From the sequence record LC819007.1: a DNA stretch of 64,000 bases. One strand, written 5' to 3'. Made by a program: the position numbers and the translations under genes. Below the pieces are notes generated by a model. It was not told the origin of the DNA. It did no database searches and saw only the letters and a program-made list of their open reading frames with translations. Of the stretch, positions 3,991 through 7,675 are shown one piece after another (position 1 is the first letter of the stretch; each line of letters opens with the position of its first letter).

Positions 3991-4035
3991 TTTTGTTCTC
4001 CTGAGTACAAAAAAATAAAGTGATAGGTATTTTTG

Positions 4036-4290
4036 CGGCATAAAGCAGCGCAGGGGGCGGCGATGATCCGAGGCTAACCCTTCCCCGTCCACCGCCGCCC
4101 TTCTCCCACACCGCACCTGCGGATTTGCCAACAGGTGCTTTTACGTCCGCATGCATCAAAGGCCGCACTTCGGAACGCTCCCGCGCAGGAAGCAGTTCAC
4201 ACATGGCGGCAGCACGCGGACGACGTCGCGGGAACTCCCGCGAGGGTCGGCGCCGTCGAGTCTCTCATTCCCGGGGGCGCCAGACACTTT
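4036..4290 (-). ncRNA. Structured ncRNA candidate (~250 nt) directly 3' of the tRNA cluster
   Basis: Five GC-rich helices including long-range 4144-4150/4216-4222; ends in TTTATGCCG; no credible ORF. Confidence 0.45.
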
Positions 4291-4304
4291 CCTACAACAA
4301 TACT

Positions 4305-4416
4305 TGGTCCCTTGAGGAGGATTCGAACCTCCGACCTACGTCTAGTGGTAGGCCCAGGCGGCTTACGCCGGCGGGCCTGATGATGACGTCGCTCTACCAG
4401 ACTGAGCTATCGCGGG
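4305..4416 (-). tRNA. tRNA-like gene (CAT anticodon) with 35-nt hairpin insert in the anticodon loop
   Basis: Canonical D arm, T arm (GGAGG TTCGAAT CCTCC), anticodon stem ACGTC/GACGT and CCA; 42-nt loop; two acceptor-stem mismatches. Confidence 0.7.
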
Positions 4417-4428
4417 CACTGGTGAAAC

Positions 4429-4516
4429 TGGTGGAGAAGGTTGGATTCGAACCAACGTAGGCACTAAGGCCAACAGATTTACAGTCTGCCCCCTTTAGCC
4501 ACTCGGGCACCTCTCC
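4429..4516 (-). tRNA. tRNA-Tyr(GTA)
   Basis: Cloverleaf, loop CTGTAAA, long variable arm, encoded CCA. Confidence 0.95.
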
Positions 4517-4531
4517 GATACTTCTGAAACT

Positions 4532-4607
4532 TGGCTCCCCAGGGTGGACTCGAACCACCGACCAACGGATTAACAGTCCGCTACTCTACCGACTGAGCTA
4601 CTAGGGA
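4532..4607 (-). tRNA. tRNA-Asn(GTT)
   Basis: 76-nt cloverleaf, loop CTGTTAA, encoded CCA. Confidence 0.95.
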
Positions 4608-4624
4608 TCTACTACAGGAAAACG

Positions 4625-4701
4625 TGGCGCGGCGTAGGGGACTTGAACCCCTGACCCCTGGCGTGACAGGCCAGTACTCTAACCAGCTGAGCTAACACCG
4701 C
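4625..4701 (-). tRNA. tRNA-Asp(GTC)
   Basis: Cloverleaf, loop CTGTCAC, G73, encoded CCA. Confidence 0.93.
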
Positions 4702-4715
4702 AAACTACAAAACTC

Positions 4716-4793
4716 TGGAAGGGGCGGTAGGATTCGAACCTACGAATACCGGAATCAAAATCCGGGGCCTTGGACCAGCTTGGCGACACCCCC
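4716..4793 (-). tRNA. tRNA-Gln(TTG)
   Basis: Cloverleaf, CCGGA/TCCGG stem, loop TTTTGAT, encoded CCA; G1-U72 and U73. Confidence 0.9.
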
Positions 4794-4800
4794 ATACTTC

Positions 4801-5105
4801 TGCATAACTATACTCCCCAGAGCTCCGGTTCAGGCGCGCAACGCGATTCGCAGATGCAGATCGTCGCGCTTTAGATCCTACTCTAGGGGCTATAGTTTCG
4901 CTGCTAACGATACAATAACTTGAAGCTTTGATTGATGGTCTTTGCTTCCTACACTTTAGGGAAGGGTATCAATCTTCCCAACGTGGCCGCGCCTCCTTTC
5001 GGTTAGCGCGCAGGTATGTCCAGGGCTCCCTTTCGGGCAGCTGAACCATGGCCAGAAGTCAATGCAGCTACATCGAGATTCTGTTAGGACCTGGGAGCGA
5101 ATGCA
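4801..5105 (-). ncRNA. Structured ncRNA candidate (~305 nt) directly 5' of the tRNA cluster
   Basis: Terminal pairing 4813-4820 with 5091-5097 and TGCA/TGCA; two GAAA tetraloop hairpins; no ORF. Confidence 0.5.
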
Positions 5106-7072: not shown

Positions 7073-7675
7073 TTACACCATCGGATTCTGCGTACCGACT
7101 TGCTTGTCGTACTTGCCGCCACGGTCCTTGTAGCTGACCTTGCACTCCGCATCGGTCTTGTTGAACAGCAGCTGCGCGATGCCTTGTTCGACGTAGATCT
7201 TGGCGTGGGTGTTCGTCGAATTAACGATTTCCACCACCAGGTTACCTTCCCAGGTCGGCTCAAGCGGCGTGACCAGCGGGAAGATACCGACGCGCGCGTA
7301 GGTGCTCTTGCCCAGACACGTGACGATCAGGTCGCGCGGAATGTCGAAGTATTCCCGTGTGTGGCCGAGCATCATGCTATTCGGCGGCAGCACTACGTAT
7401 TCCAGGCCGTCTTCGTCGACGCAGAGCTTCGGTTCCGTGTAGACATCCACGTTGAGCTTGCGCGCATCCGAGAGCACACCGTTCAGATTCGTGAACAGCT
7501 TCAGCTCTTTCTTCGACAGCACGATGTCGTAGCCATACGACGACACGCCGTACGACAGAATGCGCTGGAGGCCTTTCGAGGTCTCCAGCGTTTTGACAGA
7601 TTCGCGCTCGAACGGCACGATCATGTTTTCTTGTTCACAGCGTTCGATGATTTGCCAATCGGCGAGAATGCTCAT
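7073..7675 (-). CDS. dcd: dCTP deaminase
   Basis: LSYGVSSYGYDI, GKSTYARVGI, TPLEPTWEGNLVVEI motifs. Confidence 0.95.
   Translation of the reverse strand: MSILADWQIIERCEQENMIVPFERESVKTLETSKGLQRILSYGVSSYGYDIVLSKKELKLFTNLNGVLSDARKLNVDVYTEPKLCVDEDGLEYVVLPPNSMMLGHTREYFDIPRDLIVTCLGKSTYARVGIFPLVTPLEPTWEGNLVVEIVNSTNTHAKIYVEQGIAQLLFNKTDAECKVSYKDRGGKYDKQVGTQNPMV

What the first reader, a model, noticed from the sequence alone, without database searches (positions are those of the whole stretch)
4305..4416. tRNA-like gene with a 35-nt GNRA hairpin inserted at the canonical 37/38 intron position
Seen: CCCGCGA-TA-GCTC AGTCTGGTA GAGC-G-ACGTC-[ATCATC AGGCCCGCCGGCGTAAGCCGCCTGGGCCTACCACT A]-GACGT-AGGTC-GGAGG TTCGAAT CCTCC-TCAAGGG-A-CCA. 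Removing 4344-4378 leaves a 77-nt tRNA with loop ATCATCA (anticodon CAT). The insert folds as AGGCCC/GGGCCT plus CGGC-GTAA-GCCG. The acceptor stem has G4.A69 and C5.A68 mismatches, and A32/C37 are atypical. Established: bacterial tRNA introns are self-splicing group I/II and far longer; short 37/38 introns are archaeal or eukaryotic, and no bulge-helix-bulge is evident here. Inference: either a protein-spliced or repaired phage tRNA, or an unspliced tRNA mimic, for example a decoy for anticodon nucleases or other tRNA-sensing defences.
Basis: partly seen in the sequence, partly recalled or inferred. Interest (0 to 1): 0.75.

Follow-up and report, generated by a model that had tools for sequence, protein, structure and literature searches.

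The report
Valine-type tRNA mimic in jumbo phage
At the end of its tRNA gene cluster, a Ralstonia jumbo phage encodes a conserved tRNA-shaped RNA whose anticodon loop is blocked by a hairpin but still keeps the bases that mark a valine tRNA, so it is most likely a non-decoding tRNA mimic from an undescribed phage RNA family, not a tRNA with an intron.

Summary
The element is real. It lies on the minus strand at 4305-4416 of Ralstonia phage FLC4-3B, directly 3' of tRNA-Gln/Asp/Asn/Tyr. Default ARAGORN, the Rfam tRNA model and the genome paper all miss it.

Thirteen relatives turned up: FLC1-1B, RP12 (with an equivalent BLAST hit in RP31), Burkholderia phage FLC9 (3 copies), a 323-kb IMG/VR genome (4 copies) and three smaller contigs. 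In the 13 hits aligned to the family model, 96.6% of stem cells pair and 15 of 21 pairs show compensatory changes (0/500 shuffles).

The 5' side of the loop, which holds the proposed CAU anticodon, differs even in the closest relative. The 3' side ends N-A-C-N-A/U in all 14 members, and the discriminator is A73 in all 14. A35, C36 and A73 are the valyl-tRNA synthetase identity set. So the insert sits 5' of a valine anticodon remnant.

U33 is not conserved, the insert sequence is free, and in relatives the insert is a T-arm module or a whole tRNA. The acceptor/T helix carries a 3'-strand irregularity in 13 of 14.

Best reading: a stable, non-decoding tRNA-Val mimic. Its partner and role are inferred, not shown. 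Splicing to a working tRNA and pseudogene decay are both unlikely.

Another first-reader note on this window (s1-162070) also called it a tRNA mimic.

The parts
4305..4416 (-). Whole tRNA-like RNA gene 'X' (112 nt, C1 to A76 with encoded CCA)
   Evidence: Sequence. ARAGORN -i call. Family model hit at 96.6 bits.
4410..4416 (-). Acceptor stem 5' strand CCCGCGA. It pairs with 4309-4315 (UCAAGGG), with a 2x2 internal loop G4.A69/C5.A68.
   Evidence: Pair 7:66 is A-U here and G-C in FLC1-1B.
4391..4407 (-). D arm GCUC-AGUCUGGUA-GAGC
   Evidence: 100% of cells paired across the 13 aligned members.
4385..4389 (-). Anticodon-stem 5' strand ACGUC. It pairs with 4338-4342 (GACGU).
   Evidence: All five pairs covary in the family and 100% of cells are paired.
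4379..4384 (-). 5' side of the internal loop, AUCAUC.
   Evidence: FLC1-1B has AUUACCU, FLC9 AUUUA and RP12 ACCA.
4350..4378 (-). Insert: 29-nt hairpin AGGCCCGCCGGC-GUAA-GCCGCCUGGGCCU
   Evidence: Folds. The FLC1-1B copy keeps the stem and a GNRA loop (GAAA). Other members carry unrelated hairpins or tRNA-like modules at this site.
4343..4349 (-). 3' side of the internal loop, ACCACUA. C34 = 4347, A35 = 4346, C36 = 4345, U37 = 4344, A38 = 4343.
   Evidence: A35 and C36 are invariant in 14/14 members. The last loop base is A in 12 and U in 2.
4316..4337 (-). Variable loop AGGUC plus T arm GGAGG-UUCGAAU-CCUCC
4305..4315 (-). Acceptor 3' strand UCAAGGG, discriminator A73 (4308) and encoded CCA (4305-4307)
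   Evidence: A73 is present in 14/14 members. The four neighbouring tRNAs also encode CCA.
4429..4793 (-). Upstream tRNA cluster on the same strand: Gln(UUG) 4716-4793, Asp(GUC) 4625-4701, Asn(GUU) 4532-4607, Tyr(GUA) 4429-4516
3991..4304 (-). 314-nt ORF-poor spacer between X and gp127. It is context only, not shown to belong to X.
   Evidence: 3 differences in 314 nt between FLC4-3B and FLC1-1B. About 78% identical to RP12 over parts of the X-plus-spacer query.

Best explanation
X is a functional, non-decoding tRNA mimic derived from a valine tRNA. It belongs to a previously undescribed family carried in the tRNA clusters of some jumbo phages of Burkholderiales and in environmental relatives. 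Inferred steps: it is transcribed with the tRNA cluster, and the host tRNA-processing enzymes cut it out to give a stable RNA of about 112 nt with a CCA end. Shown by comparison: selection keeps an L-shaped tRNA body, A35-C36 with A/U38, and A73. These are the bases valyl-tRNA synthetase reads. Also shown: the U-turn side of the anticodon loop is replaced by a hairpin of free sequence or a larger module, and the acceptor/T helix carries an irregularity on its 3' strand. Inferred: the RNA therefore cannot decode on the ribosome and probably binds EF-Tu poorly. It presents a tRNA-Val look-alike to a protein that reads tRNA-Val. That protein could be host ValRS, which may charge it poorly, or a tRNA-Val-directed nuclease or modification enzyme, for which X would act as a decoy or sponge.
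For: The tRNA fold is under selection. Across the 13 aligned members, 96.6% of cells pair and 15/21 pairs change on both sides, with 0/500 shuffles reaching this. Controls with the partner slid by 1-3 columns give 31-52% pairing. RNAalifold recovers the cloverleaf independently, including a 2-nt bulge in the acceptor 3' strand. A35 and C36 are invariant in 14/14 members and A73 in 14/14, while N34 takes all four bases and N37 takes three. ValRS identity rests on A35, C36 and A73, with G20 and G45 minor (PMC9976931). G45 is present in AGGUC. U33 is not conserved and the 5' side of the loop is free. Between FLC4-3B and FLC1-1B almost all differences in X fall in the insert and loop. The only two outside them are the compensating pair 7:66. 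The NACNA motif, the hairpin and its GNRA loop are kept. The flanking tRNA-Tyr and tRNA-Asp show 0 differences and the spacer 3/314. X has the same strand, spacing and encoded CCA as the neighbouring tRNAs. The phage has five canonical tRNAs and no tRNA-Val (PMC11530567). The family is multi-copy in some genomes: 3 copies in FLC9 and 4 in a 323-kb genome.
Against: There is no expression or processing data; no RNA-seq run holding this phage was found. The window copy has the weakest acceptor stem of the family (5/7 pairs), and its lowest-energy fold in isolation is not a cloverleaf. ValRS needs a regular acceptor helix (PMC9976931), so charging may be poor or absent. G20 is U here. No tRNA-Val-specific nuclease is known to me. 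No conserved protein lies next to the clusters. Conservation of A35/C36/A73 rests on roughly 8-10 independent lineages.
Confidence: 0.6

Rival explanations
1. X is an intron-containing tRNA. Proteins cut out the insert and the phage RNA ligase reseals the loop, giving a decoding tRNA (Met-CAU, or Val-NAC).
For: ARAGORN in intron mode accepts it. All four sequenced phages tested that carry X encode an Rnl-type RNA ligase (PF09414 plus PHA02142 OB fold). FLC9 and RP12 also encode RtcB. In L147 and L008 the insert is a complete tRNA, which RNase P and 3' processing would excise. Insert sequences vary freely, as intron sequences do.
Against: The anticodon inferred under the 37/38 rule differs among orthologues: CAU, UAC, GAG and no call. 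No single excision rule leaves a 7-nt loop with U33; at best 7 of 14 members do (worked from the tables). Position 37 is a pyrimidine in 5 members. No bulge-helix-bulge is present and no splicing endonuclease was found. RtcB is absent from FLC4-3B, FLC1-1B and the 323-kb genome with four copies, yet present in BcepSauron, which has none. CAC, the anticodon here, would read GUG, which I expect the GC-rich host already decodes well (my inference, not tested).
Confidence: 0.12
2. The tRNA body is only a carrier. It gives processing signals and stability to whatever sits in the anticodon loop (a hairpin, a T-arm module or a whole tRNA), as engineered tRNA scaffolds do. The cargo is the functional part.
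For: The same site holds very different inserts across the family: hairpins of 18-46 nt, T-arm plus hairpin plus D-like modules, or a full tRNA.
Against: The hairpin cargo has no conserved sequence. A pure carrier gives no reason for invariant A35-C36 and A73, nor for the recurrent irregularity in the acceptor/T helix.
Confidence: 0.15
3. X is a decaying tRNA pseudogene that a small palindromic insertion disrupted.
For: The acceptor has two mismatches. Standard finders give no call. The Rfam tRNA model falls below threshold for the window copy.
Against: Compensatory changes occur in all four stems across the family, and at 7:66 within the closest pair of phages. The insert site and the NACNA motif are conserved across very divergent phages. 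Some genomes carry several copies.
Confidence: 0.05
4. X is a processing signal, a tRNA-like cleavage site that releases the conserved 314-nt downstream RNA.
For: X is the last tRNA-like unit before a conserved non-coding stretch in FLC4-3B, FLC1-1B and RP12.
Against: In FLC9, L013 and the 323-kb genome, family members sit between ordinary tRNAs with no such downstream RNA. This role does not explain the conserved anticodon-side bases.
Confidence: 0.05

Closest known systems
Phage T4 'species 1' stable RNA (rnaC), with rnaD, at the end of the T4 tRNA cluster
   Same: Both are small RNAs encoded at the 3' end of a phage tRNA cluster. T4 rnaC has a canonical T arm, pairing between its 5' and 3' ends and a large internal insert, and the record annotates it only as a small, stable RNA with no function given.
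   Different: There is no detectable homology; the family model hits only T4's tRNAs and not rnaC. rnaC has no obvious D arm or N-A-C-N-A motif.
Valine-accepting tRNA-like structures of plant RNA viruses (TYMV type)
   Same: Both are viral tRNA mimics that do not decode yet keep the valine identity bases A35 and C36 in an anticodon-like loop. Large stem-loop insertions can be tolerated there (PMC9976931).
   Different: Those structures form the 3' end of an RNA genome, with a pseudoknotted acceptor. X is a free-standing gene with an ordinary acceptor topology. The Rfam Tymo_tRNA-like model does not match X. Valylation of X is untested.
Bacterial Y RNA-like YrlA (tRNA-mimicking module bound with Ro/Rsr)
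   Same: Both are non-decoding RNAs with tRNA-like D/T elbows. The nested family members in FLC9 contain a closed-acceptor tRNA-like module with YrlA-like topology.
   Different: The Rfam YrlA model scores about 20 bits against a threshold of 69. No Ro/TROVE protein is encoded in these phages. X has free acceptor ends with CCA.
Archaeal/eukaryal intron-containing tRNAs
   Same: Both carry a short insert in the anticodon arm. The pattern scans also found genuine examples in archaeal genomes.
   Different: X has no bulge-helix-bulge, the phage has no splicing endonuclease, and the insert is not at 37/38 when judged by conservation.
Phage tRNAs with anticodon-loop changes that escape host tRNA nucleases (for example T5 tRNA-Lys against PARIS)
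   Same: Both are phage tRNA-cluster products plausibly shaped by conflict over tRNA cleavage. RNA repair ligases are present in these phages.
   Different: Those tRNAs are still decoding tRNAs with 7-nt loops; X cannot be. This comparison rests on my own knowledge and on the news item PMC11455837, which I saw only in a search listing.

Membership tests
Canonical elongator tRNA (Rfam RF00005) | Score at or above the family's gathering threshold (29 bits) | tested here: not met
   The window copy gets no RF00005 hit at gathering or at E<=10. The FLC9 orthologue reaches 42 bits with a 41-nt insertion.
Canonical elongator tRNA (Rfam RF00005) | 7-nt anticodon loop with U33 and a purine at 37 | tested here: not met
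   The loop is 42 nt. U33 is not conserved in the family, and position 37 is U here.
Canonical elongator tRNA (Rfam RF00005) | Cloverleaf with 7-bp acceptor, D arm, anticodon stem and T arm | tested here: met
   All four helices are present and covary. The acceptor here has 5/7 pairs.
Protein-spliced (archaeal/eukaryal type) intron-containing tRNA | Bulge-helix-bulge motif at the exon-intron junctions | tested here: not met
   A 6 x 7 nt internal loop lies between two helices, with no 3-nt bulges flanking a 4-bp helix.
Protein-spliced (archaeal/eukaryal type) intron-containing tRNA | A splicing endonuclease is available | tested here: not met
   PF01974 is absent from FLC4-3B, FLC9, RP12, the 323-kb genome and BcepSauron. 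The bacterial host was not searched.
Protein-spliced (archaeal/eukaryal type) intron-containing tRNA | The same mature anticodon loop in orthologues after excision | tested here: not met
   ARAGORN -i gives CAU, UAC and GAG for three orthologues and does not call the RP12 orthologue.
Group I intron-containing bacterial/phage tRNA | Self-splicing intron with the P1-P9 core, usually over 200 nt | tested here: not met
No intron family matched in Rfam.
tmRNA | tRNA-like domain plus tag reading frame | tested here: not met
   ARAGORN finds no tmRNA. The Rfam permuted tmRNA model scores 11.7 bits against a threshold of 47.
YrlA / bacterial Y RNA | Rfam RF02553 score at threshold, and a Ro (TROVE) partner | tested here: not met
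   21 bits against 69. No TROVE domain in the phages.
Valine-identity tRNA or tRNA-like substrate of ValRS | A35, C36 and discriminator A73 | tested here: met
   Invariant in 14/14 family members. The identity rules come from PMC9976931.
Valine-identity tRNA or tRNA-like substrate of ValRS | Regular A-form acceptor helix; minor elements G20 and G45 | tested here: inconclusive
   G45 is present (AGGUC). Position 20 is U. The acceptor is irregular, with a 2x2 loop here and bulges in relatives.
Valine-identity tRNA or tRNA-like substrate of ValRS | Actual aminoacylation with valine | not testable with these tools
   This needs an in vitro charging assay or an acid-urea gel.

The most novel reading that the evidence does not exclude
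Some jumbo phages carry a dedicated family of tRNA-Val mimics. Host ValRS, or a tRNA-Val-directed defence nuclease, recognises them through A35/C36/A73. A built-in insert and a bent acceptor/T helix keep them off the ribosome. They would act as decoys, sponges or non-ribosomal valine carriers. In the nested forms, excision of an inner tRNA would leave a naturally split tRNA mimic.
Probability: 0.3. Interest if true: 0.8.

Novelty: new variant of a known kind. Interest (0 to 1): 0.6.

Why it matters
Phage tRNA clusters are usually read as codon-usage helpers or as spare parts against host tRNA nucleases. This RNA keeps the shape and the valine identity bases of a tRNA but has lost the ability to decode. 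The family shows strong covariation, occurs in several copies in some genomes, and is absent from Rfam and from the genome annotations. That points to a second, non-translational use of tRNA-like RNAs by large phages. It also gives a direct test: does ValRS bind or charge it, and does deleting it change host range? In addition, it shows that standard tRNA finders miss such genes or, in intron mode, assign them misleading anticodons.

Tried and rejected
1. RNA-seq evidence. No run holds this phage. The best runs share only 5-11% of sampled words, probably conserved tRNA words, so I did not lay reads.
2. Rfam. Gathering and E-value modes on the window, on relatives and on other insert-bearing tRNAs found no family for the inserts.
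3. Protein partners in the phage genomes. No TROVE/Ro, CCA-adding enzyme, class Ia synthetase or splicing endonuclease was found. RtcB presence does not track the family. Only an Rnl-type ligase is common to the carriers.
4. Conserved neighbouring proteins. None is shared between the FLC4-3B/RP12 group and the FLC9/L146/L013 group.
5. Homology to T4 rnaC/rnaD. None was found with the family model.
6. Uniform excision rules. I tried 6+1, 3+4, 2+5 and 0+7 nucleotides from the two loop sides. None gives U33 in all members (worked).
7. A second T-arm-like site at genome position 260832 is not tRNA-like.
8. Literature searches for phage tRNA introns, tRNA mimics and jumbo-phage tRNA-like RNAs found no description of this family.
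9. I did not run the complex predictor. A ValRS-X model scored against shuffled RNAs would show only tRNA-likeness.

Full report
**Where the window comes from.** The window is identical to Ralstonia phage FLC4-3B (LC819007.1), a 291-kb jumbo phage; window base 1 is genome base 124001. The finding lies on the minus strand at 4305-4416. It is 12 nt downstream of tRNA-Tyr, the last of a same-strand cluster Gln-Asp-Asn-Tyr. The genome paper reports five tRNA genes, and the GenBank record annotates no feature at this position (PMC11530567).

**Checking the observation.**
- acceptor CCCGCGA/UCAAGGG with G4.A69 and C5.A68 mismatches;
- D arm GCUC-AGUCUGGUA-GAGC;
- a 5-bp stem ACGUC/GACGU that closes a 42-nt loop;
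- variable loop AGGUC and T arm GGAGG-UUCGAAU-CCUCC;
- discriminator A73 and an encoded CCA.

Inside the loop, a 29-nt hairpin with a GUAA tetraloop is flanked by AUCAUC on the 5' side and ACCACUA on the 3' side. Default ARAGORN and the Rfam tRNA model do not call the element.

**Relatives.**
- Orthologues at the same place exist in FLC1-1B (X plus its downstream region 97.5% identical) and in RP12. RP31 gives an equivalent BLAST hit, whose sequence I did not read.
- Burkholderia phage FLC9 carries a diverged copy.
- Pattern scans of IMG/VR and metagenomes added L013, L079, L146 and L147 (listings).
- A covariance model built from 12 members finds 1 copy in FLC4-3B, 1 in RP12, 3 in FLC9 and 4 in a complete 323-kb IMG/VR genome. 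It finds none in BcepSauron.
- Members score 77-118 bits, and ordinary tRNAs score 68 bits or less. Two other insert-bearing tRNA-like genes (L010 at 72.5 bits, L015 at 67.6) fall just below the members.

**The fold is under selection.** RNAalifold recovers the cloverleaf on its own, including a 2-nt bulge in the 3' strand of the acceptor. On the 13 hits aligned to the model:
- 96.6% of cells are standard pairs;
- 15 of 21 pairs show changes on both sides;
- no shuffle out of 500 reaches the observed values;
- sliding the partner by 1-3 columns drops pairing to 31-52%.

Within the closest pair of phages, X differs mostly inside the loop and insert. The only two differences outside them convert pair 7:66 from A-U to G-C. 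tRNA-Tyr and tRNA-Asp are identical between the two phages, and the 314-nt downstream spacer has 3 differences. The hairpin changes remove a mismatched C and turn GUAA into GAAA, so both the stem and a GNRA loop are kept. This rules out random decay.

**What is conserved in the loop.** It reads AUCAUC, AUUACCU, AUUUA, ACCA, CAUUUU and CAGUGA in the six hairpin-type members. ARAGORN's intron mode accordingly gives Met, Val and Leu for three orthologues and does not call the RP12 orthologue.

The 3' side always ends N-A-C-N-A/U immediately before the 3' strand of the stem:

| Member | Motif |
|---|---|
| FLC4-3B, FLC1-1B | CACUA |
| FLC9 X | CACCA |
| RP12 | UACCA |
| L013 X | GACAA |
| L079, L146_a | UACAA |
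| L146_b, L146_c | CACAU |
| L146_d, FLC9 n2, L147 | AACAA |
| FLC9 n1 | AACUA |
| L013 n | CACAA |

A and C at the two middle positions are invariant in 14 of 14. The discriminator is A in 14 of 14. N34 takes all four bases. NAC is the valine anticodon. A35, C36 and A73 are the main ValRS identity elements, with G20 and G45 minor and a regular acceptor helix also required (PMC9976931). So the insert sits 5' of a valine anticodon remnant and replaces the U33 side. It is not at 37/38.

I tried every simple excision rule. The best leaves U33 in only 7 of 14 members, and position 37 is a pyrimidine in five.

**Other family traits.** The insert is variable:
- Six members carry unrelated hairpins of 18-46 nt.
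- In FLC9 n1 and n2, L013 n and L146_a, b and d it is a T arm plus a closed hairpin, often followed by a D-like segment. That amounts to a second tRNA-like module.
- In L146_c the insert is a non-T-arm structured element.
- In L147 it is a complete tRNA, and in L008 a similar nested arrangement holds tRNA-Ile inside a degenerate outer tRNA-like gene.

The acceptor/T helix is irregular on its 3' strand in 13 of 14 members:
- a 2-nt bulge after the fifth pair in 7;
- a 1-nt bulge in the acceptor in 2;
- a 1-nt bulge in the T stem in 2;
- the 2x2 loop in FLC4-3B and FLC1-1B, which looks like loss of GC from an ancestral CC-AA-GCGGG.

**Enzymes.**
- All four carrier phages tested (FLC4-3B, FLC1-1B, FLC9, RP12) encode an Rnl-type RNA ligase.
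- RtcB is present in FLC9, RP12 and BcepSauron. It is absent from FLC4-3B, FLC1-1B and the 323-kb genome with four copies, so it does not track the family.
- No splicing endonuclease, Ro/TROVE protein, CCA-adding enzyme or class Ia synthetase is encoded.
- No conserved protein neighbour is shared across the family.
- FLC4-3B has only five canonical tRNAs (Arg, Tyr, Asn, Asp, Gln) and no tRNA-Val.

**Interpretation.** Shown here:
- a conserved tRNA-shaped RNA gene;
- a blocked, non-canonical anticodon loop;
- retention of the valine identity bases.

Inferred:
- It is processed like its neighbours. It shares their strand and spacing, and all of them encode CCA.
- It cannot decode.
- It engages a protein that reads tRNA-Val.

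ValRS is the obvious candidate, but the irregular acceptor argues for poor charging. A decoy or sponge role for a tRNA-directed nuclease is possible and untested.

Rivals:
- Splicing to a working tRNA: about 0.12.
- The tRNA body as a mere carrier for the insert: about 0.15.
- A processing signal for the downstream RNA: about 0.05.
- A pseudogene: about 0.05.

**Comparison with known systems.** The nearest analogue by position is T4 species 1 RNA (rnaC), a stable RNA with a T arm at the end of the T4 tRNA cluster, for which the record gives no function. The family model detects no homology to it. The nearest analogue by logic is the valine-accepting tRNA-like structure of tymoviruses (PMC9976931). 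YrlA resembles the nested modules, but neither its model score nor its Ro partner is present. I found no description of this family in Rfam or in the searched literature.

**Verdict.** The intron reading with anticodon CAU is not supported. The tRNA-mimic reading is supported and sharpened to a valine-type mimic family. Function remains untested. I rate it a new variant of a known kind, with interest 0.6.

Noticed in passing
L030 ~7258-7355, L031 3833-4185 (three in tandem), L036, L044, L049 (a 244,834-bp contig, probably vibriophage KVP40 by its size) 4568-4815, L060, L062, L065, L072, L077: This is a separate, widespread group of phage tRNA genes, 113-124 nt long, in contigs of 36 to 340 kb. 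They carry an insert of about 45 nt (a hairpin followed by an ACAGCA/ACAGCU motif) inside the 5' strand of the anticodon stem, and an intact 7-nt anticodon loop follows. Rfam's tRNA model accepts them with the insertion, but no Rfam family covers the insert.
   Followed up: partly
L151, L153, L155, L157, L158, L161, L168-L174 (Nostoc/Calothrix); L167 = L119 (Polyangiaceae); L080, L089, L120: Bacterial tRNA genes carry a conserved insert of about 48 nt (consensus ...GUUCACCCCUUGCC-loop-GGCCGACGAAUUAGGGUUA...) between position 26 and the anticodon stem, with varying anticodons after it. No Rfam match was found for the insert.
   Followed up: no
L008/L016/L113 ~7330-7500; L147 2869-3022 (minus): A complete tRNA (Ile-GAU; Arg-UCU) is nested inside the anticodon loop of an outer valine-type tRNA-like gene. 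Processing of the inner tRNA would split the outer one just 5' of its NAC motif.
   Followed up: partly
L005 2386-2496 (RP12): This is a type II (long variable arm) tRNA-like gene with a 25-nt anticodon loop. ARAGORN calls it Ser(act) with an 18-nt intron. It lacks the NAC motif and belongs to a different kind.
   Followed up: no
window 3991-4304 (minus): A 314-nt ORF-poor stretch lies between X and gp127. It is nearly identical in FLC1-1B (3 differences) and partly conserved in RP12, with several GC-rich hairpins. It may be a separate non-coding RNA, as another first-reader note suggests.
   Followed up: partly
window 4532-4607 and 4716-4793: tRNA-Asn and tRNA-Gln differ at 22 and 18 positions between FLC4-3B and FLC1-1B, while tRNA-Asp and tRNA-Tyr between them are identical. 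The tRNA cluster is a mosaic in which single tRNA genes are swapped.
   Followed up: no
L021, L024, L033, L040, L057, L064, L075 and related IMG/VR loci: A further group of roughly 98-nt tRNA-like genes has a conserved 26-nt extra segment in the anticodon arm (GCGAGCGCCAGCGGUCAUGAACGCGAACGCUCAUC...). L021 also holds an RT-15 RNA (Rfam RF03018).
   Followed up: no
window spacers 4417-4428, 4517-4531, 4608-4624, 4702-4715 and 4292-4304: The short spacers after each tRNA and after X share a GUUU...GUAG(U)-like motif. The bases just before family members often read UCAGUG or UCGAUG. These could be processing signals.
   Followed up: no
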